Positions 4,341-64,000 of a DNA stretch of 64,000 nucleotides are shown in pieces. Positions within the stretch are counted from its first letter, which is position 1. Every line of letters begins with the position of its first letter. The notes under the pieces are model-generated. The model was not told the DNA's origin and did no database searches. It saw only the letters and a program-made list of their open reading frames with translations. Position numbers and translations under genes: made by a program. The stretch comes from Mobula hypostoma (Eukaryota): NCBI RefSeq assembly GCF_963921235.1, contig NC_086124.1, positions 22,940,001 through 23,004,000 of the forward strand. Direction: 5' to 3'.

Positions 4341-5379
4341 ACTTCTGCACAGGAAGGCAATGGAAGAACATCCTTGCTTGGACTGTGTTCGTCATTGACG
4401 CAAACGGCGTATTTCACTGTATGTATCGATGTGCATTGGACAAATAAAGCTAATCTTTACCTTTCTGCCATTCTCCACCCACATTTGCAACTAAATTTTT
4501 AACGCTGTAATTGTAGTCACCTCCACCCTTCCTCTGTCAGCTCATTCCTCACACCCAACACTCTGCGTGAAGCTTAAATCTCTCCCGTCACTCTAAACCT
4601 GCAGCTTCTCGCTTCGTATTTCCTTCAGGTTATGTTGCAACCTGGCCGGCCGCAGCCCAGTCCAGAGAGTGAGGCCGATTCCAATGCTCGCCCTTATCTA
4701 GGAAAGGATGGGCTGACATTGAAGAGCGCTGAGAGGAGGCTCAAAGAACGATTCTGGGGAACAAAGGAGCATTTGATAGCCTGGGTCTGTACTCACTGGA
4801 ATTCAGAAGAATGAAGGGGAATCTCATTGCAACCTATTGAACGTCCAAAGGCCTCTACAGAGTAGATGTGGAGAGGATATTTCCGATGGTGAGGGAGTCA
4901 AGACCAGAGGACACAGCCACAGAACAGAGGGCCGTCCATTTAGAATGGAGATGAGGAAGAATTTCTTCAGCCGGAGAGAGATGAATCTGTGGCCACAGGA
5001 GGCTGTGGAGGCCAAGTCATTGAGTATATTTAAGGCAGAGGCTGATAGATTTTTGATTAGTCAGAGCATGAAAGGGTAGGGAGAATAGGAGATTGGGGCT
5101 GAGAGGAAAAATAGATCAGCCCTGAAGAAATGGTGGAGCAGACTCCAAGGACCAAATGGTCTAATTCTGTTCCTATATCCTCTAATAGTCTTTGCCATCT
5201 GTGACCACTTCTCCATCAGTGAACCTGGGATATGACACTGCCAGATGTCCGTCTGCTCTGCCCCTCCTACAGAACACAGCTTCCACCGCACCCCACGTAA
5301 CCTGTCACCTAAACTGGGACACTCTGGCGCCTTCTGCGCTCCCCCAGAACCACCCCCTCCACCACATCCGTGATCTGAC

Positions 5380-7017: not shown

Positions 7018-8374
7018 CTGCAAAGGGACGGAGGTCGGTGATGGAGAGCTGGCCTGGCCTCTAGAGACGCACGGACACCACTTCCAGTCCAGTAATTGGT
7101 GACCCCCCCCCCACTATTCCCCATTTCCCTCTCTCATCTCATCTCCCATCACCTCCCTCTGGTGCTCCTCCCCCCTCTCCAGCCCTTTATCTCTTTCACC
7201 AATCGACTTCTCAACTCTTTACTTCAGCCTGCTGCCCCTCCCGGTTTCACCTGTCACCTTGTACATCTTTATCCCCTACTCCCACCTTCTTACTCTGGCC
7301 TCAACTCTTTCCCAGTCCCGATGAAGGTGGTCGGCCCGAAACATCGACTATTTACTCTTTTCCATTGATGCCGCCCAGCCGGCTGTGTTTCTCCAGCACT
7401 TTATGAGTTACAGTCCACCAGCTATACAAAGGATGTCATTACACTGGCCCGGGGGGGGGGGGGGAGGAAGATTCACCAGGATCTTCTGGGGACCGGAGGG
7501 CTCGATATCTTGATATATGAGGAGAGGCTGGACAGACTGGGACTGTTTTCCCTAGAGTGAAGGTGGTTGAGGGGTGACCTTGTAGAGGTTTATAAAGCCA
7601 TGAGGGTCGTAGATAAAGTGGATAGTGACAGTCTTTTCCCGCAGGGTAGGAGCATCTAAAACGAGAGGGCACAGGTTTGAGCGGAGGGGTTCGCTAGGAA
7701 CCTGGGGGGCAGGTACTTCCACACAGAGGGTGGTGGGTTTATGGAGCTGCCAGAGGAAGTGGTTGAGACAGGACACTCACAATGATAAACAGACAGGAAA
7801 TGCTGAGGCTTTATAAGCCATTGGTCAGACTGCACGTGAACAGCTTCAGGCCTCTCATCTAAGAGAGGATGTGCGGGCATTGGAGAAAGTCCAGAGGAGA
7901 ATGATCCCAGGAATAAAAGGTTAACATACGTGGAATGTTTGATGGCTCAGGGCCTGTAATCGCTGGAGTTTACAAGAACTGGGGAAGCTCACTGAAACCT
8001 ATTGAATATTGAAAGGACGAGATACAGTGATTGCATAGAGGAAGTTTCCTATATCGGGGGAGTCTAGGTCCACAGGGCATAGGCTTTGAATAGAAAGATA
8101 TTTCTTTAGAACGGGGACGAGGAATCTCTTTAGTAAGAGGGTGGTGAATCTGTGAAATTATTTGATACAGATGGCCGTGGAGGCCAAGTGGTCAAAGGTA
8201 GGATGTGCAAACTCTACACCAAGTATTCAGTGCCAGAGATGTTGAAGTTGTCCAAGACGTTGGTGAGGCCAAACTTGGAGTATTGTGTCCAGTTTTGGTT
8301 ACCTACCTACAGGAAAGATGTAAGTCAGGTTGAAAGAGTACAGAGAAAACTTACAAGGATGTTGCCGGGTCACC

Positions 8375-13720: not shown

Positions 13721-14399
13721 CTGAACAGGGGCAGGGATAACACAGAACAAAGCTCAAAGTCAATTTTAAAAAAAAACAGTTTCAGGCAATCTCAAGCTCC
13801 TGGATCTCAAAATCTCTGGGGACCTAACCTGGACCCAACACATCGATGCAGCTATAAAGGAGGCATGACAACAGCTACATCTCATTAGGAGTTTGAGATG
13901 ATTTAGTATGTATTCCTCCCTGGCCAAACTTGAGCAAAAGAACAGAGAACATAAAACAATAGAGCACGATACAGGGCATTTGGCCCACAATGTTGTGTCG
14001 ATCTTTCAACGTATTCTAAGATCACTCAAACCCTTCCCTCACATGGAGTCCTCCATTTTTCCTATCGTCTAGAGCTTTCTAAATGTCCCTAATATATCTG
14101 TTTCTACCATTCCACACAAACCCACCAATCTCTGCATAAAGAACTTAACTCTTAAATTACTGCCCCTCCCCTTCATTCGGCCAAAGACCTTAAAATTATG
14201 TTCCTTTGTATTAGTAATTTCTGCCTCGGCAAAAATTTTCAATATACCTTTAACTAATAAATAAATTCAAATGTATGTGACTTTTCGATTTCCATTCTAA
14301 ATACTTATAGAATGCATATCACGAATAAAAATGCTTAAAGTGCCGTGCAGTTTCCAGGTTGTATAAAAATTTCCTGCTCAGATGCACAGCTGTCCGTTT

Positions 14400-16330
14400 C
14401 TCTTTCTCCTTTCCCCCTCCCTCCCCCTTCCCTGGGTCCCTTTCCCACCTCCCTCCCCCGTGTCCCTTTTCCCCCTCCCTCCCCTTCCCCGTGTCCCTTT
14501 CCCCCTCCCTCCCCCTTCCCCGTGTCCCTTCCCCCCTCCCTCCCCTTCCCCGTCTCCCTTCCCCCTCCCCCTTCCCCGTGTCCCTTCCCCCCTCCCCGCG
14601 TCCCTTCCCCCCTCCCTCCTCCCCTCCCCCTCCCTCCTCATCCTTTCCCCTCCCTCCTCCCCTTCCCCCTCCCTCCACCCCCTTCCCCCTCCCTCCCTCT
14701 TCCCCCTCCCTCCCTCTTCCCCGTGTCCCTTCCCCCTCCCTCCCCCTTCCCCGTGTCCCTTCCCCCCTCCCTCCCCCTTCCCCGTGTCCCTTCCCCCCTC
14801 CCTCCCCTTCCCCGTGTCCCTTCCCCCCTCCCTCCCCTTCCCCGTGTCCCTTCCCCCCTCCCTCCCCTTCCCCGTGTCCCTTCCCCCTCCCTCCCCCTTC
14901 CCCGTGTCCCTTCCCCCTCCCCCTTCCCGTGTCCCTTCCCCCTCCCCGTGTCCCTTTCCCCCTCCCCCTTCCCCGTGACCCTTCCCCCCTTTCCCATGAC
15001 CCTTCCCCCTCCCTCCCCCTTCCCCCCTCCCCCTCCCTCCCCCCATTCCCCCCTCCCTCCCCTTCCCTTCCCCGTGTCCCTTCCCCCCTCCCTTCCCTTC
15101 CCCGTGTCCCTTCCCCCCCGCGTCCCTCCCCCCTCCCCCTCCCCTCGTCCCTCCCCCTCCCATCGTCCCTCCCCCCTTCCCCTCCCCTCGTCCCTTCCCC
15201 CTCCCTCCTCCCCTTCCCCCTCCCTCCTCCCCTTCCCCCTCCCTCCTCCCCTTCCCCCCCTCCTCCCCTTCCCCCTCCCTCCTCCCCTTCCCCCTCCCTC
15301 CACCCCCTTCCCCCTCCCTCCACCCCCTTCCCCCTCCCTCCTCCCCTTCCCCCTCCCTCCACCCCCTTCCCCCTCCCTCCACCCCCTTCCCCGTGTCCCT
15401 TCCCCCTCCCTCCACCCCCTTCCCCCTCCCTCCCCCCTTCGCCGTGTCCCCCCTNNNNNNNNNNNNNNNNNNNNNNNNNNNNNNNNNNNNNNNNNNNNNN
15501 NNNNNNNNNNNNNNNNNNNNNNNNNNNNNNNNNNNNNNNNNNNNNNNNNNNNNNNNNNNNNNNNNNNNNNNNNNNNNNNNNNNNNNNNNNNNNNNNNNNN
15601 NNNNNNNNNNNNNNNNNNNNNNNNNNNNNNNNNNNNNNNNNNNNNNNNNNNNNNNNNNNNNNNNNNCCCCTCCCTCCCCCTTCCCCGTGTCCCTCCCCCT
15701 TCCCCGTGTCCCTTCCCCCTGCCTCCCCCTTCCCCGTGTCCCTTCCCCCCCTCCCTCCCCCTTCCCCTTCCCCCTCCCCCCTCCCCCCTGCCTCCCCCTT
15801 CCCCTTCCCCCTCCCCCCTCCCCCCTGCCTCCCCCTTCCCCCCCTTCCCCGTGTCCCTTCCCCCCCTCCCTCCCCCTTCCCCGTGTCCCTTCCCCCCTCC
15901 CTCCCCTTCCCCGTGTCCCTTCCCCCCTCCCTCCCCCTTTCCCGTGTCCCTTCCCCCCTCCCTCCCCCTTCCCCGTGTCCCTTCCCCCCTCCCTCCCCCT
16001 TTCCCGTGTCCCTTCCCCCCTCCCTCCCCCTTCCCCCCTCCCCTTCCCCGTGTCCCTTCCCCCCTCCCCCTCCCCCCCGTGTCCCTTCCCCCTCCCCCCC
16101 TTCCCCCCTCCCCTTCCCCGTGTCCCTTCCCCCCTCCCTCCCCCTTCCCCCCTCCCTCCCCCTTCCCCGTGTGCCTTCCCCCTCCCTCCCCCTTCCCCGT
16201 GTGCCTTCCCCCTTCCCCGTGTCCCTTCTCCCCTCCCCTTCCCGTGCCCCTTTCCCCTTCCTTCCTAACCTCCTTGTGCCTTCCCCCTTCCCCTCCCCTC
16301 CCCCTTCTCCGTCCCCGTCCCCCTTCTCCC
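14400..16330. repeat. Polypyrimidine/polypurine minisatellite (core ccccgtgtcccttcccccctccct) filling much of IMP4 intron 1
   Basis: ~1.9 kb almost pure C/T with recurring CGTGT; source of the spurious Pro-rich and Gly/Arg-rich ORFs. Confidence 0.95.
15455..15666. other. Assembly gap (212 N)
   Basis: Run of N inside the C-rich repeat. Confidence 1.
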
Positions 16331-44844: not shown

Positions 44845-45340
44845 CTCTTTCACTCGCCTCCCTCCACTCCCCCTCCCCTTTGCCTCTCCTTCCTTCTCTC
44901 ACCCTTCCCTCATCCCTTTCCTCTTTCCCCTCCCTTCCCTCTCTTCCCTTCACCCCTCCCCCTCACCTTTCCCACCTCACCTCTCTCCCCCTCACCCTCC
45001 TTCTCTGTCCCCTTCTCTCCCCTTCCCTCCGCTACCCCTCCTTCTCTCTGTTGCCCCATTTCGTCTTCTCCTCCCTCCTCTTCTTCCCCTCTCCCCTCCC
45101 TCCCCTCCTTGCCCCCTCTCCCTTCCTCCCCTCCTTCTCCCTCCCCTTCTTCCCCTCTCCCCTGCTTCCCCCTCTCCCTTCCCTCCCCCTCTCCCCTCCC
45201 TTCCCTCCTTCCCCCTCTCCCCTCCTTCTCCCTCCCCCTCTCGCCCTCCCTTCCCTCCTTCCTCTCTCCCTTTTCCTCGTTCTCCCTTTTCTCCCTCTTC
45301 CTCCTTTCCCTCCCCCGGACTCTGCCCCCCCCGCCCCCTC
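44845..45340. repeat. C/T low-complexity tract filling almost all of ALAS2 intron 6 (similar tract 40185-40535 in intron 8)
   Basis: Nearly pure pyrimidines on plus, G/A-rich on the pre-mRNA. Confidence 0.9.
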
Positions 45341-45352
45341 CGCGCCTCATAC

Positions 45353-48789: not shown

Positions 48790-49009
48790 ATGATGGCTTT
48801 CAGGACGCGGGGGTGTCGGCTCATTCCCAGATAGTCGTTGCTGCACCACACGGACACGTCGTGTCCTTCCGCCGTGGGCTTAGCGTAGTGTTCCGCGAAA
48901 GGATACTCCGCCGCTTTCCGGTTCACGGTCTTGAACACACGGTAGGTATGATCTTCTTTCTTCTCCTCGATCTTGCGCTCAAAGAATCCGTCGTAGTCAA
49001 AGGCATTGT
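48790..49009 (-). CDS. ALAS2: ALAS2 exon 5
   Basis: tgacag|AC AAT...ATC AT|gtaagt; [52 protein letters not shown]; 220 nt. Confidence 0.97.
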
Positions 49010-51575
49010 CTGTCAGTTAAAAAAAAGATGTGCGGGAGAGGGGAAGGAGACAGAAACAGCGAATCAGTCAACGGGACAAACTTAACTAACCAAATTGGTA
49101 AGTCGGTTTATTATCGTCACGTGTACCGAAGTACAGTGATAAAACTTTGCATGCCGTCCATCTGCGCATCGAGTCAGTACAAAGGAATGCAGAATAAAGT
49201 GTTTCAGTTAGCGAGGAAGTGCAGTGGAAGCAGACAGTAAGCTGAAAGGGCCGGAACGAGGCACAGTGCCCATCGAATCCTGCGAGAGAACCGTTCCACA
49301 ACAGCGGGATAGAAGCTGTCCATGAGCCCGGTGGTACGGGCTTTCGGGCTTTTGTATCTTCTGCCCGATGGGAGAGGGGAGAAGAGAGAGTGTCCGGAGT
49401 AGGCGCGGTCTTTGGCTGCTTTACTGAGGCAGCGAGAAGTGTGGGCAGAGCCCGTGGAGGGGAGGCTGGTTGAGCTGGGTCCACAACGCTCCGCACTTTC
49501 TCGCGGTCTCGGACCGAGCGGTTGCGGTCCCAAGCCGTGGTGCATCCGGACAGGACGCTTTCCGTGGTGCGTCAGTTAAAAGTTAGTGAGTGTCAGTAGG
49601 GAAATGGCAAATTCTTCAACCCGATGAGGAAGGAGAGACAATGAGTGAGCTTTGTTGGCCCGTGGTGACTGCGTGGCTGGACTAGGGGTTGACCTCCCTT
49701 CCGCCTCCCTCCCCCAGGAAGGCAATAACCAGTTCCTTTGATTTTCTGACACCTCAAAGCGAAGGTCGAATCTGAAGGCACAATACAGGGCTAATGACAG
49801 ATTTCTTAACAGTGTGGAGGAGCAGGGGGATCTTGGGGTCAACGTTGAGAGATCCCTCAAAAATGACACGCAAGTAGATCGGATTGCTAAGAAGGTGTGA
49901 GAAGGCCTTCATTAATCGGGGGACTGAGCTCAACAGCCGCGAGATTATGGTGCAGATCTATAAAATTCTGGTCAGACCACATTTGTGCTCATTTCTGGTC
50001 ACCTCATTATAGGAAGGATGTGGAAGCTTTAGAGAGGGTGCAGAAGAGATTTACCAGGATGCTGCCTGGATTAGAGAGCATGTCTTATGAGAAGAAGTTC
50101 AGTGAGCTCAGGCTTTTCTCTTTGGAGTGAAGGAGGGTGAGAACAGATTTCTTTTGTCCCCTTAGATGGGGATGGAATTCCGAAATCGATGTGGAAGGGA
50201 GCGTAGGAGTCTTAGTGCGGGATTCCCTAAAGCTAAACTTGCAGGCTGAGTAGGTAGTAGAAACGGAGGTTTTAGAACAGCTCCTTCCCCTCCGCCATCA
50301 GATTTCTGAATGGTACCTGAAGCCACTAACACGACCTGTCTATTTAGTTTTTCACTTTATTCATTATAATTTATATTTTTATGTCTTGCCACAAGGGGGA
50401 AATTTCACACGTGTCAGTAATAATAACTGATTCTGACTCTGATCTCTGACCTGCCGTGGTCGGCTTAGTATTTATCCGTTAATGCTCTGGTCGGCGAGGA
50501 CGCCTTTGATGTGAAGACCTGGCAGTCCCCTACCACTGGCACTCAGGAGTCGCCGGTGGGAGTCCGTCGTGTTGGAGGCAGTGGTTCCCGGTGTGTTGGG
50601 AAGGAAATTTCCAGCCCGTGTCCCAGTACTGTCCGCATCTGTCTGAGCGCAGGTGTCGGCCGTTCTATGCTCTTGTCTGAGCCGATATGAGGAGAGGCTG
50701 GACAAACGAGGGTTGGATCCCTGCAGCAGCGGGGGCTGAGGGGAGGCCTGGCAGAGCTGTGAGGCGTAGATAAAGCAGATAACCGGTATCTTTTATCTCC
50801 AGGACGGTAATGTTTAATACTAGACGACATACATTTAGAAGGGGAAGATTTAAAGTAGACATGCGTGGTAAGTATTTCACTTGGAACTGAAAATAACTGA
50901 CAAGACCAACCTACGTTTGAGTCTGGGATTTTAAATGCTGAGTATCACATACTTGGAAAAAATGTGCGAAGATCCAGAGAGACAGGGAGAGACAGCGAGA
51001 TTAGTCAGGGTGTCAAAGGTTACTGGGAAAAGGCAGGGAACTGGGGTTGAGAGGGGTGATAAATCGGCCATGATGGAATAGCGGAACAGGCTCGATGGAC
51101 CGAATGGCCTAGTTCTGCTCCTATGTTTTAGGGTCTTAAAATCACAGACAGATGCACACATGCACGCAGACACGCATGGAGACATACGGACACACAAACG
51201 CACGGATTCACAGTCTCGTGCGGGACTACAACTAGAGGTCATGGGTTAAGGGTGAAAGGTGAGAAGTTTAAGGCGAACATGAGGGGGAACTTCTTCACTC
51301 GGAGGGTGGTGAGTGTGTGGAACGAGCTGCCAGCACAAGTGGTGCATGCGAGCTGGAAATCAACGTTTAAGAGAAGTTTGGATAGCTACATGGATGGTAG
51401 GGGTATGGAGGGTTATGGTCCCGGTACAGGTCGATGGGATGAGGCAGTTTAAATGTTATTGGCATGGACTAGTTGGGCCGAAGGGTCTGTTTCTCTGCTG
51501 AATTTCTCTATGACTTTATGAACCACAGACTCTCAGACTCGCCCATACACATACAGACAGACAGACAGACAGACA

Positions 51576-51576
<1 letters not shown>

Positions 51577-51612
<36 letters not shown>

Positions 51613-51787
51613 CCACACACATACCCCTGTCCATGTTGTCCTGGAGAAGGTGAGTAGTTGCTGGGACGCCGTCTTGGACCTCGTTATCCAGCGCCGGCTG
51701 CCAGTCGAGAATCGCCTCGGTCTGGGTGAGTTCTGGAAGGCAGAGAGATACCGTGATGATACAGCAGCACGTAACGGCGACTCCGGG

Positions 51788-51832
<45 letters not shown>
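51577..51832. repeat. (AC)~17 at 51577-51611 and (GT)~21 at 51790-51832, in inverted relation around ALAS2 exon 4
   Basis: Direct reading of the sequence; (ACAG)n precedes at 51553-51577. Confidence 0.95.
51625..51732 (-). CDS. ALAS2: ALAS2 exon 4 (symmetric phase 1-1, 108 nt)
   Basis: ttccag|AA CTC...AGG G|gtatgt; (E)LTQTEAILDWQPALDNEVQDGVPATTHLLQDNMDR; THLLQDNM matches the ALAS HLxQxNM motif. Confidence 0.88.
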
Positions 51833-51835
<3 letters not shown>

Positions 51836-54396
51836 GGGGTTGGTGGTGGTGGGAGTTGATCGTTCTCTTGGGCCTGACCCAAAGTTGTTCGCCCTCCTCT
51901 CCGCTGTCAGCCACATCTTCGGTCCAATTGGGCGCCACGGTAGCGTTGCGCGGCCCTATTACAGCTTGGTGTGTCAGAGTTCAATTCTCGCTCCGCCTGT
52001 AAGGCGTTTGTACGTTCTCCCCGTGATCGCTTGGATTTCCTTCGGGTGCTCCGATTTCCTCCCACAGCCAAAGACTAGTTTGCTGGGTTAATTAGTCATT
52101 GTAAATTGCCCCGTGATTAGGCTGGGGTTAAGTGGGTGGTTTGCTGGGCGGTGCGGCTCGTTGGGCCGGAAGGGGCTGCTCCGCGCTGTAGCTCTATAAA
52201 TAAAATAAAACTGTGGTCAGCTCGGCGTCGGGGGTTCTCGGACTGATCCTCTCGGCTGCCAGGACCCCACTCGCCCCTGGGGCCGGACACTGCTGAACCA
52301 AAGCTCAATGCAGACCAACATCCAGCAGCTCCTGGACCAGGACCCGATGGTAGAAGTTCCCCAGAGGTGGGGTGGATCAGGGGAGTGTGCCAACCTCTCT
52401 GTCTAAAATAACGCCTCCAGCTAGGGAAGAGGCTAGGTAGCATCCACGCCAAGACGACCAGACTGAAAAACAATTAGTCAGAGTGATCGGCACCTCCACC
52501 CATTAACCCATGCCATCACCCACTATCACCATTACATCCACAGCAGCCCTTCATCTCCCCATGCACTGCCAATATACGCTTACACTCCATACCTTATACC
52601 TACACGGACGCAGTCACTGCCTGCTGCTACGTAGAAGAGTTCCTCTCAATACCATAAGACACAGGAGAAGAATTTGGTCATTTGGCCCATCGAGTCTACT
52701 CCGCCATTTCATCATGGCTGAACCATTTTCCTACCTTCTTCTCGTATCCCTTCATGCCCTGACTAAACAAGAATCTATCAACCTCTGTCTTAAATATACG
52801 CAAAGATTTGACCTCTACAGCCGCTTGTGGCAACGTATTCCAGCGATTCTACTCTTTCTGGTGAAAGAAATTCCCCCTCATTTCCGTTCGAGAAGGACGC
52901 CCCTCTGTTCTGAGGTTGCGTGCTCTGGTCCTAGACTCCCCCATCATAGGAAACATTCTCGTCACACCCTTTCAACATTCGATAGGTTTCAATGAGGTCA
53001 CCTCTGGTACTTCTGCATTCCAGTGAACACAGGCGCAGAGATGTCAAACACTCTTCATGTGACAAGCCGTTCAATACTGGAATCATTTTCGTAAACCTCC
53101 TTTGAGCCCTCTCCAGAGTCAGCACAATTTGAGTTCCTCTTGCCAATAGTCGCCTTGTCAACTTTATCATGTCCTGTCAGTCACCTTATGTTCAGATACT
53201 GCGCCACCTAGCGTCACTTCACGATACAGTCTGTCTATAAGCTAATCTTATGTACATAACTAACAAGGCTTTTTGTGTTTTGTGTTTTTTTAATGTTGAT
53301 CGGATCCGGAGTAACAATCACTTCCTTCTCTCTTACACTGGTGTACTGAAGAATCACAATAAACAATCTTGAATCTTGAGCCTTTAATGACATCACCGGT
53401 TTTTATTTCTCAGCGAGAGACCATCTGGGCCGTGTCGCCCAAGATGCCCATCCAGGCTATTTACCAGAGACCCCTCGGTGAATGGGAGGGGTCTATGGCA
53501 TAAAAAGCTTGGGAGCCCCTGCTCCAAACCTTTCCTATCCATGTACCCGTCCAACTGCCTTTTAAATGTCGTTATTGTACATGCTTCAACCAGTTCCGCT
53601 GGCAGCCCGTTCCAGACTCACCACTCTCTGAGTGAAGTTGTTCTGTCTCAGGTTCCCTTTAAACATTTCACCTTTCACCCTTAACCTGTGACCTCTAGTT
53701 CTAGTCTCACGCCAGAGGAAAATGTCTGCATGTATTAACCCTATCTATACCAGTCCTAACTTTCTATACCTCTGTCAAATCTGTCCCCGTTCTCCAAGAA
53801 ATACAGCTTTTACCTACTCAGCCTTTGCCTATACACCAGGTCTTGGTTAATTTTCTCTGTATTCTATTCAATCTTATTGATATACTTCCTGTAGGTAGGT
53901 GACCAGGACTGTGTACAATATACCAAATTAGGTTTAATCAACGTCTTATACAACTTGAGCATAACATTTCAACTCCTGTACTCAGTACTCTGATTTATGA
54001 AGGCCAATGTGCCAAAATCTCTTTTTACGGTCCTATCCTACAGTGATCCCACTTGCAAGGAATTATGTATCTTTATTCCCAGAACCGTCTATTATGGCGT
54101 AACCCTCAGAATCGTGCCCTGCTTTGCCCTTGCAAAGTGCAACACCTCACACTTGTCTACATGAATAACAAATTACATCTGCTATTCTTATAACTATTCT
54201 ACTTGTGACGCCGATTTCAAGGGATTATGGAACTTAGTTCTGTGTAAAAATGGCATTTCTCTGCTCGGACTTTAGAACAGTGCGGTGATAGGGGGCCACG
54301 CTGTTCTTCTAGTGCACAAGTAAATAAAGTGTGTTTGCCAAATGGAGTTCGAGTTTTCAGTGTCCAGTTAAGCGGGGGTGACAGAGGCACACTCAC

Positions 54397-54579
54397 CTCT
54401 CCGAGGTGCCATGACTGCCAGGTCCTCCTGCACCGCCAGGCTGGCCTTGCGGATCAGCTTGCTCAGGCCCCCCTGAGCCTCCAGCTCCACGAAAGGGCAG
54501 TTGGACGCGACGTCCTGGCTGCCGGACTGGATCATGGCCTTGGCCGAGGCTAGCAGCGGTGACGGAAAGCCGCCAGCCC
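54397..54579 (-). CDS. ALAS2: ALAS2 exon 3 (third CP heme-regulatory motif)
   Basis: tttcag|GG GCT...AGA G|gtgagt; ..QDVASNCPFVELEAQGGLSKLIRKASLAVQEDLAVMAPRR; 183 nt, phase 1->1. Confidence 0.92.
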
Positions 54580-55450: not shown

Positions 55451-55470
55451 CCTCCCCCTCCTTTCCGATA

Positions 55471-56070
55471 GGGGGAGCTCCACCCTGTGTCTGACTCCAG
55501 GAATGAGTTATGGGACGGTGTAGAGGAAACTTCAATCAGTGTCTGACGCCGGGATGTGTAATGGAACGGTGCAGAGGGAGCTTCACTCTGTGTCTGACCC
55601 CAGGAATGTGTGATGGGGCAGTGAGGGTGGAGATTCACTTTGCGTCTGACCTCTGGAGTGAGTGACAGGATATTGTGGAGGGAGCTTCACTCCGTTTCAG
55701 TCCCCAGGACTGTGCGATGAGACAGGGTAGAGGGAGTTTTACAGTGTGTCTGACCCGGGGATATGCGATTGGACAGTGTAGACAGAGTGTCACTCTGTGT
55801 CTGACCCCGGGAAAGTCTGATGGGACGGTGTGGAGGGAGCTTCACACCGTGTCTGATCCCGGGAGTGTGAGACGGGACGGTGTAGAAGGAGCTTCACACC
55901 GTGTCTGATCCCGGGAGTGTGAGATGGGACGGTGTAGAGGGAGCTTCACACCGTGTCTGATCCCGGGAGTGTGAGATGGGACGGTGTAGAGGGAGCTTCA
56001 CACCGTGTCTGATCCCGGGAGTGTGAGATGGGACGGTGTGGAGGGAGTTTCATGCCATGTCTGAGCCTGC
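55471..56070. repeat. 52-bp minisatellite (gggagtgtgagatgggacggtgtagagggagcttcacaccgtgtctgatccc), about 11 copies, ALAS2 intron 2
   Basis: Unit starts at 55861, 55913, 55965 and 56017 (period 52); copies further left are more diverged. Confidence 0.9.
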
Positions 56071-56177
56071 CCAGGGATGCTGGCGACTGCATCAATCGGG
56101 TGTTGAAGATTGTCAAGAGGTGCGGTATCGTATTGTTGAACGGTGCCATTAGGACTCCCCCTCCCCCCCACGTTTAC

Positions 56178-56349
56178 CAGATGATTCCTTCTCCTTGGCC
56201 CACTGCAGGTTGAAAATGGAGGTGGCCACGCCGCGGGACATCACGGGGCAGCGCTGAGCGTAGACAGCCAGCGAGGGTCCCGCCTTCTGCATGAAGATCC
56301 GAGGAACTCGGAGCAGAAAGGGGCAGGTGTGGGCGAAGAACCCCATCAT
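56178..56349 (-). CDS. ALAS2: ALAS2 exon 2 coding part (mitochondrial presequence, two CP motifs); exon begins at 56359
   Basis: ttgcag|gtcagagctgATGATGGGG...TCT G|gtaaac; MMGFFAHTCPFLLRVPRIFMQKAGPSLAVYAQRCPVMSRG... The second ATG (56346) has the stronger Kozak context. Full CDS 1809 nt, 602 aa. Confidence 0.93.
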
Positions 56350-57109
56350 CAGCTCTGACCTGCAAAACAAAGGCACGGAAACTGGAACCAAGTGACTAGT
56401 GTGTGCGTGACTGCGTGAAAGTGATTGCGAGTCTGTGTGAGTCTGTGTGTGATTGTAGTCAGTATGAATGTGCGTAAGTGAATGAGTGTGTGTGTGATCT
56501 CAATGTCTGAAAGTCTGAAACTGTGTATGAGAGAGTGTGAGTGTGTGTGCGTGTGAGTGTGTGTGATTGTGTGTATGAGTGTGTGTGTGAATGATTGTGT
56601 GTAAGTGAGTGAGTGTGAGAGTGTGTATGAGTTTGTGTGTGTGAGTGAGTGTGAACGAGTGTTTGTTAGGATCAGGTTTGTTATCACTGAAAAATATATG
56701 TTGAGAAATATGCTGTTTCGTGGGAGCAGTACAGTGCCATATTGAAGTTGCTATGGTAAATAAACAAACAAACAAACAGATAGTGAGATAGATCAATAAA
56801 TAAATAGCGCCAATTAAGACTAGTGTGGTTGTGTTCATGGGTTCATTATCCGTTCAGAAACCCGATGGCGATTTTCCTGAAACGTTGACTGTGTGCTTTC
56901 AGGCTCCTGTAACTCCTCCTTGGTGACAGCAATGTGAAGGGGGCATGTCTTGAGTGATGGGGGTCCTTAATGATGGATGCCGCCTTTCTGAGGCATCACG
57001 ATTTGAAGCTGTCCTCGCTACTAGTGCTCATGATGGAGCAGGCTTGAGTTTACGACCCTCTGCAGCCTCTTGTGATCCTCTGTGTGTGCATATGCGTGTC
57101 TCAGTCTCT

Positions 57110-57145
<36 letters not shown>

Positions 57146-57851
57146 ATGTGTGTGTGTGTGTGTGTGTGCGTCTCAGTCTGCGTGTGTGTGTGTGTCTCAG
57201 TCTGGTCTGTATACCATAAGACTATAAGATATAGGAGCAGAATTAGGCCTTTTGGCCCAATGAGTCTGTCCACCATTTCATCATGCCTGATCTATTTCCC
57301 TCTCAGAGCCAATGTCCAACTTTCTGTCCATAATCTTGGATGCTGTCATAAATCTCTTCCTTAAGTATACTGAATGAGTTGGCCTCCACAGCCACCAGTA
57401 GCAAAGAATTCCACCGATTCATTACTCTCTGGCTGCAGAACCCCCCCCCCCCCCGCCCCTCATCTCCGTTATAAAAGGACAGACCTCTATTCTGAGGCTA
57501 GGGTCTCTGGTCTTAGACTCCCCACCATAGAATGCACCCTCCAGTCTCCACAATTACTCTTTCGTGGTCCTTCAACATCCGGTAGGTTTCAATGAGACCG
57601 CCCTCACCCCCGTTATTCTTTTGAGATCCGGCGAGTACAGGCTCAGAGACATCAAACGCTCCTCATAGTAATAATAATGACCATATATGATACGTCTTTG
57701 AATCCCGGTATATTTATATGCGTTTGTGTGTGTGTATTTGTATCCCTAAGTCTGTGTGTTTGTTTTGTGTTGATATGTGTGTATATGCTTTCCCCAGCGT
57801 GCGTGGCCTTGTCTCTGACTGTACGTGTGTGTGTGTGTGTGTGTGTGTGTG

Positions 57852-57892
<41 letters not shown>

Positions 57893-59484
57893 GCGCTCGT
57901 CCGTGTGCACGAGGAGTCTTCATACGTCTCTGTGACCCTGTGGGTGGTGGAGGGGACCTAGTTCGGGGAGTCGGACCTCTGACCAGAGAGATCGACGACA
58001 GGGCCCCAAAAGAGGCACTGGGGCAGTGAAGAACACACCACCCCATGAAAGGGTCTTCAGTACTGAATCCGTACCCCACCTCCCTCCAGCCGAATAACAC
58101 CTTCACATCTAACCCTCAGGGAAGACAGGTCACTCTCACATCTAGACATTCAAGCTGATTTATCTTACGCATTTAAACTAATTCCAATTGAATGGCCCCC
58201 ACCCTCCAGGTTACGCTCTCTTCTCGCTGCTACCATCAGGAAAGAGGTCCAGGAGCCTTAGGTCCCAAACCACCAGGTTCAGGAACAGTTACTACCCTTC
58301 AATCTTTGAATGCACAACGCATCGAGCCTTGAAGTAGATGGGCTACAGCGGCGGAAGGCTACGCCGGGTTCCACTCTTGCACCTAATCAAGTGGCCATTG
58401 ATTGTAGAACGAGCTGCCAGATGAAGTGCTTGAGAGAGGTACATTAATAACATCAATATTAATAGCAATTGGACAGATACATGGATAGGAAGGGATACAT
58501 AATAAGAAAGGGTTAGATACTAATAAACTGCCCAGCGCCCAGTGTCAAACTGTCAGGCATCAGGCTTTGGAGGGATATGGGCTAAACGCGCGAAAATAGG
58601 ACTAGTTTAAATGGGCATTTTGGTTGGCATGCGCTCGTTGGGCCGAATGGCATGTTTCCATGCTGTGACTCTGTCACTTTCTGACCCTTGTCTCTGGGTT
58701 GGAACTGTTGTGTACGAACAGCCGTGTAGGACTGCAGCTGACAGGCACGCCCCTGACGCGGCGTCTGGGTGCCAGAGATAAGCCGAGACCCTCCGCTACC
58801 CCCAGAGTTTGCCTGGATTCTGCCGAAGGCTTCGGCCAGTGAGAGAGCTGCGGCCTGAATCCGACCAATAGGGGTGAGCTGAGCGACTGGGGAGACTCGC
58901 GGCGGCCAATCGCGTCTTGCAGCGTCGCTGTCGTCAGTCAGAGAGGCCGCTCGGGAGATAACCGGTCCTGCCAGATCAGCACGGACACAAGCCCTCTCGG
59001 CTCAACCTGTCAGTGCCGACCTCCCCAGCTTGTCCACTTGCCCGCGTTTCGCCCAACCCTTCCTATCCATGTACGTGTGCAAGCGCCTTTTAAACCACGT
59101 CCTTTGGCAGCTCGTTCCACGTACCCACCCACTACATGTAAACGTTGCCTCTTTAACTTCTACCCTCTCCTCTTAAATCTGTGCCCGCTACTTTTAGACT
59201 CCCCTCCATTGGGGAGAAAACTGTAACCTCCCTTCCCTTATCTAAACATCTCCTGATTTTTATAAACCACGAATTGCCTAATTCTACTCCTGTGCCTTGT
59301 GGTCTTAATTACAATTGCAGATCACACTTGACAGAACATATCTCGGTAGGCCAAAACACAGGCAAGTGGGATCAGCTCCCTGGTCGGCATTAGCGTGTTG
59401 GGCCGAAGGTCCTGTTTCTGTGCTGTTTGACTCTATAACTCTATACGTTAGCTCTGTACGTTGTATACTGTTTTACATATCTGA

Positions 59485-59785
59485 TGTTGGCCAAGTGGTT
59501 AAGGCGTTCGTCTAATGATTCGAAGGTCGCTAGTTCGAGCCTTGGCTGAGGCAGCGTGTTGCGTCCTTGAGGAAGGCACTTAACCACACATTGCTCTGCG
59601 ATGACACCGGTGCCAAGCTGTATGGGTCCTAATGCCCTTCCCTTGGACAACATCGGTGGCGTGGAGAGGGGTGACTTGCAGCAAGGGCAACTGCTGGTCT
59701 TCCATACAACCTTGCCCAGGTCTGTGCCCTGGAAACCTTCCAAGGCGCAAATTCATGGTCTCATGAGACTAACGGATGCCTATAT
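59485..59785 (+). mobile_element. tRNA-derived SINE with CORE-like segment
   Basis: A box tggccaagtgg, B box agttcgagcc, CORE-like gtccttgaggaaggcacttaac, (ta)n tail; atatctga present on both sides. Confidence 0.6.
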
Positions 59786-61983
59786 ATATCTGAGAGGGAG
59801 TACTTTTTACTTTTTTTTCTGTCTACCCCTGACGGGACTAATTCTGGCCGCACAGGACGAGAAATGACCCCAACACGTACCGCAGTAATTGCAGAGTACA
59901 GGCACCGGGGGTGTGAACTGCTTGGGAACTAGCAGAGCAGTGGGTCTGTGACCCACCCGGGACCGCAAGAGGTGACTCTTTTCCCTGCTGGTAGAAGCTG
60001 GAAGTTTTCTACGGAGAGGACTGAGACTGCTTGCCTCACGGCCGGGCATGGAGGGTCTAATTCACAGCTTCGCATGAGACCTCACAGGGTTGTAGACTTA
60101 TCTCGGGCCACAACCCCTCCCCCACCGTCGGGGACATCTTCAAAAAGCGATGCCCCAAGAGTGCAGCGTCCGTCACTAAGGACCCTCCCCATTCAGGGCA
60201 TGCTGTCTACACGCTACTGCCGTCGGGGAAGACCCGCACTCAACGACTCAGGAACAGTTTCTTCCTCTGAACGTTCTATGAGCCCATGAACACTACCTCA
60301 CGACGCTTCTTTCGCTATCGATCTGTTTATTTTTGTGATTTATAGTTCACAACGTACGTCAGTAAGTCTGGTTCTGATTCGGAATATCAGCGGTATCCTG
60401 CAGGGGCCAGTGAAACGCCACCGTACAGGTAGCTGCATTCCGGGCTCCGGACTGCCTCGCTTCGCTAACAGCCAGCTCAGACACTCCTCTCCCCTGCCCT
60501 CTGAGTCGGCAGCCTCAGCGCAACGGGGTTGGGGTGTGCGTGGGTGAAGCCCTGAGCAGCCTGCAGCCCTAAAGTACGCCCCCTTCATAGCCCTTATCCT
60601 GTGGCAAGGCAAAACCCCCACCATGACCGGGAGTCACTCTGTGCCTGTCTGGATAATTGCCTGTCAGGGCCTTCCAAAGGGTTAAAAGAGCTCTAACGCG
60701 TTAATAACGACTCGACTGACCAATCGAACCGTTCACCGCAAATGACGTAGTCTCCTACACGGAGTGGTAGAGTCACACGGCATGGGAATAGGACCTTCGG
60801 CGGTCGTTTGGCCACTTGTATCAGTAGTCCCAAATAGGACTATCTTGGGACCATCTCCTTGGTCGACGTGGACGAATGGGCGCGAAGGGTCTGTTCCGAT
60901 GTTTTTGATTCTATGACTATGCGTTCTTAAGGGAACTGCTATTCTGTATATCTGAGGGGATTTGTTTTTGCCTGCCACTGACTGGGCTAATTCTGGTGTG
61001 TCGTACAGGACGAGAAATGGTCCCAGTACGCACAGTTATTCTGGTGCACACGCACCGGGAGTGGACTGCGTGAGGACACGCTGACTACACGACCTAATCC
61101 TACTCGCTCGCATTTGCCCCCCTCACATCCCTCTGAACCTTTCCTATCCACCCACTTGTTCAAGATGCTTAAAGTATTGTTAACGCACCCGCCTCAGCCG
61201 CCTGCTCTGGCAGCTCGTTCCACACACCCGGCACCCTCTTGGTGAAGAAGCTGCCTCTCGGGTCGGGTTCACTTTGAACCTGTTGTAGACTCCCCGAACT
61301 TGGGGGTGGGGTGGCTGGCGGGCTGTAGATACGCCTCTATCAAAGGAGGTGCAAGGCGCTGCTTCCCTCCGCTAGCCTGCAGGTCACCCTTGGGCGAGGT
61401 GTAGCGCCTGCTTAGCAAATCCCCGCTCCCCGCACACACCATTCAGGGTCACCTGAGGCCGTGGGAGCAGGTGGTCGATGGTCGTATGAGCAGCCGGTGC
61501 ACATCACAAGTCCTGATTATTCGACAACTGAAGCCGGGCAGACAACCTCTGAAGATTATTGATAATGGCTGGGGTCACCCGCTTTGTAAAGACACTGCCC
61601 AGGAGAAGCCAATGGCAAACCACTTTGTAGAAAAATGAATTGTCAACAGCCACCACGGTCATGGAAAGACCACGGTCGCCTACGTCAAATGACACGGCAC
61701 ATAACGACCGAAAGAACCCCTGGGGGGTGGAGGGGGTAGACCATGACCTTATCGAAGCCCCTTACCGTTTTAATAAACCTCTATAAGGTCATCCCTCCAG
61801 CGAAAAAATCCCAGCCCTGTTTAGCCTCTCTTTATAACTTAAGCCCCCACTCCCATCCTGGTAACATCTGTTCCTGAGCCCCTTCCAGTTCCGGGGACGC
61901 CCTTGCTAGATCTGGGCGACCAGAACTCTACTCAAAAATCCCCAAGTGCGGCCTCACCGCCGCTCCGTGCCGTTGAAGCATAC

Positions 61984-62070
61984 CTGGAGGAGGAATCAAA
62001 GATTCGTTTCGCGATCTCTTCTTGTCAGTCTCTTGTTGTCCTACACTGAGGACGAACATTCAACATTGGG
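61984..62070 (-). other. ALAS2: ALAS2 non-coding exon 1 (5' end approximate)
   Basis: Contains the IRE and ends ctccag|gtatgc; erythroid promoter motifs lie immediately upstream; same architecture as vertebrate ALAS2. Confidence 0.85.
62034..62058 (-). promoter_or_regulatory. Iron-responsive element (IRE) in the ALAS2 5' UTR
   Basis: Minus strand UGUU-C-GUCCU-CAGUGU-AGGAC-AACA: CAGUGN loop, perfect 5-bp upper stem, unpaired C, 4-bp lower stem; closely resembles the mammalian ALAS2 IRE. Confidence 0.96.
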
Positions 62071-62099
62071 ACGGTGGGTTTTTCAACGATGACTAGTTG

Positions 62100-62260
62100 T
62101 TTTCGATGGGGGTGGGGTGCCCTTTTCCCTCGAGCAGGGATTGGTTCCCCGCAGAGGCTGGAACGGCTGAGATAAAGAGGTGGGGACAGCGGATAGAGGC
62201 GAGCGGTGCCCTGGTCGAGAGAGGATAAGGCTGCTGAGGAGAAGGTGGGGGAGGGGGTGT
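62100..62260 (-). promoter_or_regulatory. Erythroid-type ALAS2 proximal promoter
   Basis: Tandem CACCC (GGGGGTGGGGTG 62108-62119), CCAAT (ATTGG 62140-62144), GATA motifs AGATAA 62170-62175, GGATAG 62191-62196 and GGATAA 62223-62228. Confidence 0.7.
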
Positions 62261-64000
62261 TCTCGGTGTTTAAGATTAGCGAGGTGAATTCGTTCCAGGG
62301 CAGAGGGAGGGACTTGCAGTTGGTTAAGAAGGCTGCTCGGTGTGTTGTAGAGGCAGCGAGTACAGCCTCTGCTTTCCAGTGGTGGAGACCCGGGTTCGAT
62401 GCCCACCTTCGCCGTTGTGGTCGCCTGTGTGTGTGTGTGTGTGTGTGTGTACCAAATGGTCAATGCCCGTAACTGCTGGTCAATTTTATATAAAAACGGC
62501 ATTTCTCTGTTTAGACTTTAGAACAGTGTGGGTGATAGGGCCGGGCTGCTTCGCGTGATTGAGAAACATCTGCGAGCTTGTCAAAGTCCCCTTAATCGGC
62601 GACGGCACCTCTGCTTCACTGTGATGCGGCTGCAAATAGCATTTTGATTGTTCCTGCACCTCACCGTGCTTGTGAGCCACCCTGAGGCGGTGTGGGAGAG
62701 ACCAGAGGCGCGCAGGAATCCCTGCTGGGTTGCGCGCTGGCCCCTGCGGGTGCTGCCCTCCAGCGCTCGCACCCTGGAAGCGCAGCTGCATTGCACCATC
62801 TGTGTTTGACCCAGCGGGCAATGTGAATTTCCTGAGCGCTTGTTCTCGCACACACACGCGACAACAGGACAACGCCACATGTACCTTGAACCTTCAGACT
62901 CAAGGACTTGCGCTAATATTATTTTGTGACTGTATGACCTATCGTAACTTTATGTGCGGTGTGCTGTGTGTGACTCTGTTTTGCACCTTGGCGGCGGAGG
63001 ACCGATATTTCGTTTAGCTGTTTACACGTGTATGGTTTGAATGACAATTAAATTTGATTTTGATTTTGATTTGTTTTGGCACGTGACAATAAACATATAT
63101 TGTTGCAAGTTAACACGCATCGTCAGGAAGGGCAGAGGTTCCCGACCTAAGGTCCACCGACCCCTCGGTTAATAGTAGGTGTCCACGGCATTAAGGAAGT
63201 TTGGGAACCCCTGAATTGGGGAAACCAATGTGACTGCGCGCGAATTTAAGTAGAATCTCAGAAGCACCTCGCTTCCTTTACACTTGAGCAGGGAACCAAC
63301 ACATCTCAGGGTGGGCGCCAGGGCTGTCGATGTGCATAATACATCTTCTCGCAGTGATCCCAAGGGTTTCCCCCGGGTTCGCTGATTTCCTCCCATGTTC
63401 CAACGAGTGTTGGGGTGATGGGATTCTGTGTGTGTGTGTGTGTGGGGGGGGGGGTGGGTGGGTATGAAGTGGATCTTGGTAGGATTAGTGTACCAGCGGG
63501 TACTAGATGATGGGAGAAGATTTGAACAGTGGAAGGCCCCGTTTCTGGGATAAGCAACGATGAAACCTGCATTCGTCATACAGGCGGCGTAGGGGATACA
63601 GTGATGTTAGAACACAAGACAGTACGGGCCCTTCACAAATAGCTGGAGTCCTAGACCTGATCCCGTGCTGGGCTACGATCATTTTAATTCCATTAAAATA
63701 ATCCTGGTTTGTCAAGTATCACAGGATCATTGAAACTGGGAAAACAGCACAGTTAATGCCCAGGTTCCTGTTTCCAGTCACCGTCCCTGTCCCTGCAATA
63801 ATCTGTCCTGCCCTCGGCCCAGCACACAGGTGCAATCCTAAGGAAGGCGTACCAACATCTTTGCCTTGTTAGGGCTGGTTACCTAACACTAACACTTCTA
63901 CAGCTGTACTCTTGAAAGTATCCTGAAAGGCTGTATCGTGGTCTGGTTCTGCAATTCGAATGCGCAGAAACGAAAGAAGCTGTAGAGAAGAGTAGTGGAC

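What the first reader, a model, noticed from the sequence alone, without database searches (positions are those of the whole stretch)
51577..51832. Complementary (CA)n and (UG)n tracts clamp the skippable ALAS2 exon 4
Seen: on the pre-mRNA the order is (CA)~21, 57 nt, the 108-nt exon 4, then GUAUGUGUGUGGCU(GU)~17. The tracts can form a >=34-bp duplex that loops out the acceptor, exon and donor. The exon is phase 1-1, so skipping keeps the frame. Established: exon 4 is alternatively skipped in human ALAS2; CA repeats bind hnRNP L and UG repeats bind TDP-43/CELF; paired AC/GT repeats at the ends of fish introns are reported to aid splicing. Here the pair brackets an exon rather than an intron. 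Inference: a microsatellite-length-tuned switch for exon skipping or back-splicing of a heme-synthesis enzyme.
Basis: partly seen in the sequence, partly recalled or inferred. Interest (0 to 1): 0.7.

Follow-up and report, generated by a model that had tools for sequence, protein, structure and literature searches.

The report
Complementary microsatellites flank ray ALAS2 exon
In the lesser devil ray, an optional exon of the red-cell heme enzyme gene ALAS2 lies between two simple repeats that could pair in the RNA and hide the exon, but the pair is recent, about as frequent as chance predicts, and has no sign of a selected role.

Summary
On the minus strand, (CA)21.5 (51832-51790), 57 nt of intron, a 108-nt phase 1-1 exon (51732-51625) and GUAUGUGUGUGGC(UG)17.5 (51624-51577) follow one another. 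RNAfold predicts a 35+7+4 bp stem, worth about -59 kcal/mol. It loops out the acceptor and exon and pairs the donor at -3..+1 and +5..+11.

The gene is Mobula hypostoma ALAS2, a 100% match to XP_062891413.1. The exon is orthologous to vertebrate exon 4.

The "tuned switch" reading is not supported:
- Pristis, Heptranchias and Rhincodon lack the CA tract. It sits in a ~75-nt insertion in otherwise alignable intron.
- Only the GU-rich intron start is ancestral.
- Both annotated isoforms in each of two Mobula species and Hypanus include the exon.
- Isoforms without exon 4 are annotated in a sawshark, a frog, a marsupial and cetaceans, so the exon is an old, widely optional cassette. Whether their flanks hold complementary repeats was not checked.
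- A placement simulation expects 0.3-0.65 such brackets in the windows already scanned.
- Predicted pairing saturates at about 3-5 repeat units.

Most likely this is a neutral, lineage-specific repeat pair that probably lowers exon 4 inclusion. It is one more case of a known principle: complementary intronic flanks promote skipping and back-splicing.

The parts
51790..51832 (-). Perfect (CA)21.5 tract in the pre-mRNA, in intron 3, ending 57 nt upstream of the exon 4 acceptor. It forms the 5' arm of the predicted clamp.
   Evidence: TRF: period 2, 21.5 copies, 100% matches. Absent in Pristis, Heptranchias and Rhincodon.
51733..51789 (-). Last 57 nt of intron 3, holding the likely branch-point region, the polypyrimidine tract (UCUCUCUGCCUUCCAG) and the acceptor. 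The CCUCCC directly after the CA tract pairs with the exon's last GGG plus intron G+1 in the predicted fold.
51625..51732 (-). ALAS2 exon 4, 108 nt, phase 1-1. It encodes (E)LTQTEAILDWQPALDNEVQDGVPATTHLLQDNMDR(D), a poorly conserved linker between the presequence region and the catalytic core.
   Evidence: 100% to residues 161-196 of XP_062891413.1; alignments.
51612..51624 (-). Donor site and GU-rich intron 4 start, GUAUGUGUGUGGC. Positions +5..+11 pair with the last CA units. This GU-rich start is ancestral: Pristis has GUAUGUGUGUGU and Heptranchias has GUACGUGUGGGG.
51577..51611 (-). Perfect (UG)17.5 tract in the pre-mRNA, the 3' arm of the clamp.
   Evidence: It is the only AC(+) tract of at least 12 nt in the 64-kb window.
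51555..51576 (-). (GUCU)n compound microsatellite that continues from the UG tract. It is not part of the duplex.
54397..54579 (-). Exon 3, 183 nt. Its last base G begins the codon completed by exon 4 (GAA) or, if exon 4 is skipped, by exon 5 (GAC).
48790..49009 (-). Exon 5, 220 nt, the start of the conserved catalytic core ([13 protein letters not shown]...).
62026..62059 (-). IRE-like hairpin in the first exon, with a C bulge, a 5-bp stem GUCCU/AGGAC and a CAGUGU loop. It supports the erythroid ALAS2 identity.
   Evidence: Motif scan. Not reported by Rfam.

Best explanation
This is a lineage-specific and probably neutral pair of young, perfect microsatellites flanking the optional exon 4 of Mobula hypostoma ALAS2. 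Shown: the intron 4 start was already GU-rich in the ancestor of rays and sharks, and it expanded to (UG)17.5. A (CA)21.5 tract arose inside a ~75-nt insertion, 57 nt upstream of the acceptor, after the split from sawfishes. Predicted: when the nascent RNA folds, the tracts form a 35+7+4 bp stem. The stem encloses the branch region, the acceptor and 105 nt of the exon in a 157-nt loop, and it pairs the donor at -3..+1 and +5..+11. Inferred: this should hinder U1 and U6 access and exon definition. Some transcripts would then join exon 3 to exon 5 in frame, giving an enzyme 36 residues shorter. A small fraction might back-splice into a 108-nt circle. The arrangement is tolerated because exon 4 encodes a weakly conserved linker that other vertebrates also omit in annotated isoforms. 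There is no evidence that it is a selected or regulated switch.
For: Tracts, spacing, exon and phase. Stem prediction: z -4.3; persists in 1.2 kb; ddG -59 kcal/mol; donor pairing probabilities 0.8-1.0 except at +2..+4. Orthologous segments fold no better than shuffles in Pristis (z +1.3), Heptranchias (-0.25) and Rhincodon (-1.1), against -5.0 in Mobula. Derived state: the CA tract is missing in Pristis, Heptranchias and Rhincodon, while the GU-rich donor context is shared. Exon 4 is optional elsewhere: annotated isoforms lack exactly this segment in Pristiophorus, Leptobrachium, Macrotis, Globicephala and Orcinus. [quoted passage not shown] Zebrafish AC/GT tracts do pair in vivo, and the cross-exon arrangement is called inhibitory (PMC4691745). 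Chance-level frequency.
Against: No RNA data were available for this species. Both annotated isoforms in M. hypostoma, a second Mobula species and Hypanus sabinus include exon 4, and no isoform without it appeared in the homologue search. So skipping, if it occurs, may be minor, or the erythroid tissue may not have been sampled. In cells, CA and UG tracts are bound by single-strand-binding proteins and long duplexes are unwound by helicases, so the predicted fold may not form. In the equilibrium model, donor pairing stays high even with both tracts removed, so occlusion of the donor is not strictly specific to the clamp. DNA for the nearest relatives could not be fetched, so the age of the CA tract is bounded only by the Pristis split.
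Confidence: 0.5

Rival explanations
1. The pair is inert. The two tracts are ordinary microsatellites that happen to lie on either side of a constitutively included exon. In vivo they are coated by proteins or unwound, and they have no measurable effect on splicing.
For: Only exon-4-containing isoforms are annotated in three myliobatiform species. The frequency is at chance level. The tracts are not conserved. Flanking-intron conservation around exon 4 is no greater than around the other exons.
Against: A near-perfect 46-bp stem abutting a donor site, worth -59 kcal/mol, is far stronger than the 13-nt matches shown to drive skipping and circularisation in C. elegans zip-2 (PMC8330042). AC/GT pairing does act on splicing in zebrafish (PMC4691745).
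Confidence: 0.3
2. The tracts act through proteins rather than by pairing. The (UG)17.5 immediately downstream of the donor acts as a TDP-43/CELF-type silencer. The (CA)21.5 near the branch point acts as an hnRNP L site. Each works on its own, and duplex formation would mask these sites rather than being the effector.
For: TDP-43-repressed cassette exons typically carry UG repeats downstream of the 5' splice site, and hnRNP L binds CA repeats (PMC5959245; PMC10197708). A GU-rich intron start is shared with Pristis and Heptranchias, so it predates the CA tract.
Against: No binding data exist for any cartilaginous fish. The two tracts are nearly equal in length and perfectly complementary, and the predicted duplex would outcompete single-strand binding thermodynamically.
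Confidence: 0.13
3. One reading: a selected, microsatellite-length-tuned switch that sets exon 4 skipping or back-splicing, and so heme-synthesis capacity.
For: Arm lengths match (43 and 44 nt). Both tracts are perfect repeats and the target is a frame-preserving exon. Human blood contains ALAS2 circular RNA (review PMC6965350).
Against: The CA tract is not conserved beyond at most the myliobatiform lineage. Predicted pairing saturates at about 3-5 repeat units, so 17-21 units leave no thermodynamic room for tuning. No isoform without exon 4 is annotated in Mobula or Hypanus. Exon 4 is omitted in annotated isoforms of several distant vertebrates, so optional use of the exon predates this repeat pair. 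Frequency is at chance level. A stem that buries the donor would also hinder back-splicing, which uses the same donor.
Confidence: 0.07

Closest known systems
(AC)m-(GT)n intron-bridging introns of teleosts and lamprey (Lin et al. 2016, PMC4691745)
   Same: The same two complementary dinucleotide repeats, within 200 nt of splice sites, form a long RNA duplex that changes splice-site geometry.
   Different: In fish, AC follows the 5' splice site and GT precedes the 3' splice site of one intron, and the pairing bridges that intron and aids splicing. Here the polarity is reversed (UG after the donor, CA before the acceptor). The partner ends of introns 3 and 4 carry no tract, and the pairing spans an exon. 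That paper calls this arrangement inhibitory and largely avoided in zebrafish. The host is a batoid, a group not covered there.
Reverse-complementary matches flanking circularised or skipped exons (Alu pairs in human; the zip-2 13-nt match in C. elegans, PMC8330042)
   Same: Complementary sequences in the two flanking introns loop out an exon. Such matches were shown to promote both skipping and back-splicing.
   Different: The arms here are pure microsatellites rather than transposon copies or unique sequence. They lie unusually close to the splice sites (57 nt and +5), so the donor itself is in the stem. The exon is short (108 nt). No RNA product has been observed.
TDP-43-repressed exons with UG repeats downstream of the 5' splice site, and hnRNP L CA-repeat elements (PMC5959245)
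   Same: A long UG run in the first 50 nt of the downstream intron and a CA run in the upstream intron are the sequence signatures of these silencers.
   Different: Binding is untested. Here the two motifs are mutually complementary, so pairing and protein binding would compete.
Exon 4 skipping in human ALAS2 (Cox et al. 2004, PMID 14643893; only the title could be checked, details are from my own knowledge)
   Same: The orthologous, frame-preserving exon encodes the linker ending in THL(I/L)QDNM. Annotated isoforms without exon 4 exist in several vertebrates.
   Different: Skipping has not been shown in Mobula. The exon is 21 nt shorter in Mobula and Hypanus than in Pristis and Heptranchias, and 15 nt shorter than in Rhincodon.
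Donor-occluding stems such as MAPT exon 10 and SMN2 TSL2 (my own knowledge, not checked here)
   Same: The predicted helix covers part of the U1 binding site and would lower exon inclusion.
   Different: Those stems are short, local and conserved. This one is 46 bp, long-range (a 157-nt loop) and made of recent repeats.

Membership tests
(AC)m-(GT)n intron-bridging introns (Lin et al. 2016) | AC repeat within 200 nt downstream of a 5' splice site and GT repeat within 200 nt upstream of the 3' splice site of the same intron | tested here: not met
   Polarity is reversed: UG follows the donor of intron 4 and CA precedes the acceptor of intron 3. No AC/GT tract lies at the other end of either intron.
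(AC)m-(GT)n intron-bridging introns (Lin et al. 2016) | The duplex brings the two splice sites of one intron together | tested here: not met
   The predicted duplex encloses the exon with its own acceptor and donor.
Exons flanked by reverse-complementary intronic matches (skipping or circular RNA) | Complementary sequences in the upstream and downstream introns able to form a stable duplex | tested here: met
   35+7+4 bp; duplexfold -79.8 kcal/mol; ddG -59 kcal/mol; z -4.3 to -5.0.
Exons flanked by reverse-complementary intronic matches (skipping or circular RNA) | An observed back-splice junction or skipped isoform that depends on the match | not testable with these tools
   No RNA data for Mobula. 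Annotated isoforms X1 and X2 both include exon 4.
TDP-43-type UG-repeat silencer | Long UG repeat in the intron just downstream of the 5' splice site | tested here: met
   GUGUGUG at +5..+11 and (UG)17.5 at +14..+48. The literature pattern is in PMC5959245.
TDP-43-type UG-repeat silencer | TDP-43 binding and TDP-43-dependent repression | not testable with these tools
   This needs CLIP or knock-down in ray cells.
hnRNP L CA-repeat splicing element | Intronic CA repeat close to a splice site | tested here: met
   (CA)21.5 lies 57 nt upstream of the acceptor.
hnRNP L CA-repeat splicing element | hnRNP L binding and a length-dependent effect | not testable with these tools
   No binding or genotype data.
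Erythroid ALAS2 gene with cassette exon 4 | Protein orthologous to vertebrate ALAS2 | tested here: met
   All exons are 100% identical to XP_062891413.1 (5-aminolevulinate synthase, erythroid-specific, mitochondrial-like, Mobula hypostoma). The best outgroup hits are named ALAS2.
Erythroid ALAS2 gene with cassette exon 4 | Iron-responsive element in the 5' UTR | tested here: inconclusive
   A motif scan finds one canonical-looking hairpin at about 62026-62059. Rfam reports no IRE at gathering score or at E<=1.
Erythroid ALAS2 gene with cassette exon 4 | The exon is symmetric and is omitted in some annotated isoforms of other vertebrates | tested here: met
   108 nt in Mobula, 129 in Pristis and Heptranchias, 123 in Rhincodon (the last two from the output corrected by one base at the donor). 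Isoforms without exon 4 occur in Pristiophorus, Leptobrachium, Macrotis, Globicephala and Orcinus.
Erythroid ALAS2 gene with cassette exon 4 | Exon 4 is actually skipped in this species | not testable with these tools
   No transcript data. No isoform without exon 4 is annotated in Mobula or Hypanus.

The most novel reading that the evidence does not exclude
The pair is a functional, heritable splicing dial in devil rays. In one version, the CA tract was fixed because it masks a TDP-43-type UG silencer that had expanded at the donor, which would make it an RNA decoy built from a microsatellite. In the other version, length polymorphism of the two tracts sets the ratio of long to short ALAS2, or of a 108-nt circular RNA, in erythroid cells through folding kinetics rather than equilibrium.
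Probability: 0.08. Interest if true: 0.6.

Novelty: new member of a known kind. Interest (0 to 1): 0.27.

Why it matters
If the clamp acts in vivo, it would be a clean natural example of a cross-exon AC/GT pairing. Lin et al. found that arrangement depleted in zebrafish and called it inhibitory. Here it sits on an exon whose omission is tolerated. It would show how new microsatellites can shift isoform ratios of a rate-limiting heme enzyme without breaking the gene, and it would be a simple system for separating RNA pairing from TDP-43/hnRNP L binding by swapping the tracts. As it stands, it is one non-conserved instance at roughly chance frequency, with no expression evidence. Its value is as a testable curiosity, not a discovery.

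Tried and rejected
1. I searched the protein collection with the 140-aa open frame that reads through both tracts and the exon, hoping to find the same region in other rays' assemblies. Only one irrelevant low-complexity hit came back.

2. DNA for the second Mobula species, Hypanus sabinus, Cetorhinus and Hemiscyllium was not delivered because the sample files were too large. Narcine, Orcinus and Macrotis products were not on record. The nearest relatives, and the species with annotated isoforms lacking exon 4, therefore could not be examined at DNA level.

3. Rfam found nothing in the window at gathering score and no IRE at E<=1 in 56000-62300.

4. I tested whether the exon 4 flanks are unusually conserved, which is a hallmark of regulated cassette exons. 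BLASTN extension into the introns is no longer than for the other exons, so this gives no support.

5. I considered that each tract is half of a Lin-type intron bridge. This was rejected because no partner tracts lie at the far ends of introns 3 and 4 and the polarity is reversed.

6. I tried to find open text stating that human ALAS2 exon 4 is skipped. Only the title of Cox et al. 2004 was found, in reference lists.

7. Earlier scan notes hold no other complementary-repeat brackets.

Full report
**Observation.**
The minus strand of 51500-51900 reads, in RNA sense: (CA)21.5 at 51832-51790, then 57 nt ending in UCUCUCUGCCUUCCAG, then a 108-nt exon at 51732-51625, then GUAUGUGUGUGGC at 51624-51612, then (UG)17.5 at 51611-51577, then a (GUCU)n run. 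Tandem Repeats Finder gives 100% matches for the GT(+) tract. A regular-expression scan shows that 51577-51611 is the only AC(+) tract of at least 12 nt in the whole window, against six GT(+) loci.

**Gene and species.**
Open segments on the minus strand give a complete 5-aminolevulinate synthase gene between about 62.06 kb and 35.56 kb. A search of 1.84 billion representatives with exon 9 returned a caecilian ALAS2 (P0001). Searching with that protein and then with the best ray hit showed that every exon of the window is 100% identical to XP_062891413.1, [quoted passage not shown] (P0229). The same species' isoform X1 (P0320, 602 aa) starts at 56349. The second Mobula species differs at nine residues.

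A motif scan finds one canonical-looking iron-responsive hairpin at about 62026-62059, with a C bulge, a GUCCU/AGGAC stem and a CAGUGU loop. Rfam reports none. The annotated protein reads ...VMAPRR-E-LTQ...[12 protein letters not shown]... So the exon is phase 1-1, and joining exon 3 (54579-54397) to exon 5 (49009-48790) gives GAC and keeps the frame. In alignments the exon ends in the conserved THL(L/I)QDNM motif and corresponds to exon 4 of other vertebrates.

**Predicted structure.**
- RNAfold of 311 nt gives a 35-bp helix plus a 7-bp helix. The energy is -137 kcal/mol against -112 ± 5.8 for dinucleotide shuffles (z -4.3, none of 100 as stable).
- The clamp persists in a 1.2-kb context.
- Pair probabilities show a third 4-bp element. 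The exon's last GGG and intron G+1 pair with UCCC just 3' of the CA tract, and +5..+11 pair with the last CA units. Only +2..+4 stay open.
- Forcing the CA tract unpaired costs 59 kcal/mol, and the bimolecular duplex energy is -79.8 kcal/mol.
- The enclosed loop is 157 nt: 52 nt of intron with the branch region and acceptor, plus 105 nt of exon.
- Within the ALAS2 pre-mRNA this is the only UG tract. Its nearest CA partner is transcribed 165 nt earlier. The other CA-sense tracts lie more than 4 kb upstream in intron 1.

**Comparison with relatives.**
Genomic loci were obtained for Pristis pectinata (L001), Heptranchias perlo (L002) and Rhincodon typus (L003).
- In all three, the exon 4 orthologue is symmetric: 129, 129 and 123 nt. 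The last two come from the output, corrected by one base at the donor.
- The donor context is GU-rich: GUAUGUGUGUGU in Pristis, GUACGUGUGGGG in Heptranchias, GUAUGUAUGGAG in Rhincodon.
- None has a CA tract upstream. Pristis has only (TG)6 at the donor. Heptranchias has no AC/GT tract in 17 kb.
- In the three-way alignment, the Mobula CA tract sits inside a ~75-nt insertion in otherwise alignable intron.
- The orthologous 100-nt + exon + 100-nt segments fold no better than shuffles in the three outgroups (z +1.3, -0.25, -1.1), against -5.0 in Mobula.
- Intron conservation around exon 4 is not greater than around the other exons.
- DNA for the second Mobula species and for Hypanus could not be delivered.

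The clamp therefore arose after the split from sawfishes, but its exact age is unknown.

**Is exon 4 skipped?**
No RNA data were available. The 90% cluster of the Mobula protein holds two isoforms each for M. hypostoma, a second Mobula species and Hypanus sabinus. All six contain exon 4 and differ only at the N-terminus. No separate isoform lacking exon 4 appeared among the homologues.

Annotated isoforms that lack exactly this segment do exist in Pristiophorus (P0272), Leptobrachium (P0165), Macrotis (P0205), Globicephala (P0250) and Orcinus (P0251). So the exon is an old, widely optional cassette, and the Mobula repeat pair is much younger than that property. The flanking introns of those species were not examined. 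For human, the library holds only the title of Cox et al. [quoted passage not shown]". That this variant lacks exon 4 rests on my own knowledge.

**Chance.**
I placed the window's seven AC/GT loci at random and asked whether any of ten internal exons becomes bracketed by complementary tracts.
- Within 100 nt, this gives 2.9-5.4 x 10^-4 per window, or 0.3-0.65 expected over the roughly 1200 windows of this genome already read.
- Within 200 nt, it gives 1.5-2.4 expected.

This assumes all windows are as rich in exons and repeats as this one. Even so, a single find does not demonstrably exceed chance. A proper test needs the whole assembly.

**Length tuning.**
I shortened the tracts in silico. 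Donor-region pairing stays high once about 3-5 units are present. It is also high, through other local pairings, when both tracts are removed. Only the total energy changes. At 17-21 units the duplex is far into saturation, so length could matter only kinetically.

**Literature.**
- Lin et al. 2016 describe AC repeats downstream of 5' splice sites and GT repeats upstream of 3' splice sites in zebrafish. [quoted passage not shown] They call the cross-exon arrangement inhibitory, link it to circular splicing, and note that it is largely avoided. Individual instances are poorly conserved because the repeats mutate quickly. The Mobula case has the opposite polarity and spans an exon.
- McClory et al. 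2018 report that TDP-43-repressed cassette exons mainly carry UG repeats downstream of the 5' splice site, and that hnRNP L binds CA repeats. This gives a protein-based rival that would compete with pairing.
- Human blood contains ALAS2 circular RNA, according to a review.

**Conclusion.**
The anatomy is real and the predicted stem is exceptionally stable. It probably lowers exon 4 inclusion by looping out the exon and covering its donor. Back-splicing is less likely, because it needs the same covered donor. Non-conservation, annotation that shows only inclusion, the old and widespread optional status of exon 4, saturation of the pairing, and a frequency near chance all point one way. This is a recent, tolerated microsatellite accident, not an evolved switch. 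It is a new instance of a known principle.

Noticed in passing
window 62026-62059 (minus strand): An IRE-like hairpin (C bulge, GUCCU/AGGAC stem, CAGUGU loop) lies in the first exon and is missed by Rfam at E<=1. The ATG of annotated isoform X2 (644 aa, MFVLSVGQQ...) lies inside this hairpin. The 42-residue N-terminal extension of X2 is therefore more likely an upstream reading frame in the 5' UTR than a real protein start.
   Followed up: partly
window 51625-51732; L001 about 4840-4968; L002 about 7370-7498; L003 about 14994-15116: Exon 4 is 108 nt in Mobula, and Hypanus has the same 7-residue gap. It is 129 nt in Pristis and Heptranchias and 123 nt in Rhincodon. All are multiples of three, and the only strongly conserved part is the C-terminal THLLQDNM motif.
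   Followed up: partly
P0272, P0165, P0205, P0250, P0251 (protein ids): Annotated ALAS2 isoforms of a sawshark, a frog, a bilby, a pilot whale and a killer whale lack exactly the exon 4 segment. This suggests that optional use of this exon is ancient in jawed vertebrates.
   Followed up: partly
window, whole: AC/GT microsatellites show strong strand bias: six GT(+) loci (26312, 51790, 57109-57195, 57825-57888, 62427, 63428) against a single AC(+) locus (51577).
   Followed up: no
window 55469-56064: A tandem array of about 11.5 copies of a 52-nt unit (79% matches) lies inside ALAS2 intron 2. On the minus strand it reads open in several frames.
   Followed up: no
window 44867-45343 and 14393-16324: Long C/T-rich low-complexity arrays. 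The first begins directly after exon 6, so the open frame runs on into a Gly/Arg/Glu-rich stretch that inflates tblastn hits. The second contains the only assembly gap (N run 15455-15666).
   Followed up: no
window 54370-54396 (minus strand): Intron 3 begins GUGAGUGUG. This could pair weakly (4+4 bp around one mismatch) with the CA tract at the other end of the same intron, as a faint intron-bridging alternative to the clamp.
   Followed up: no
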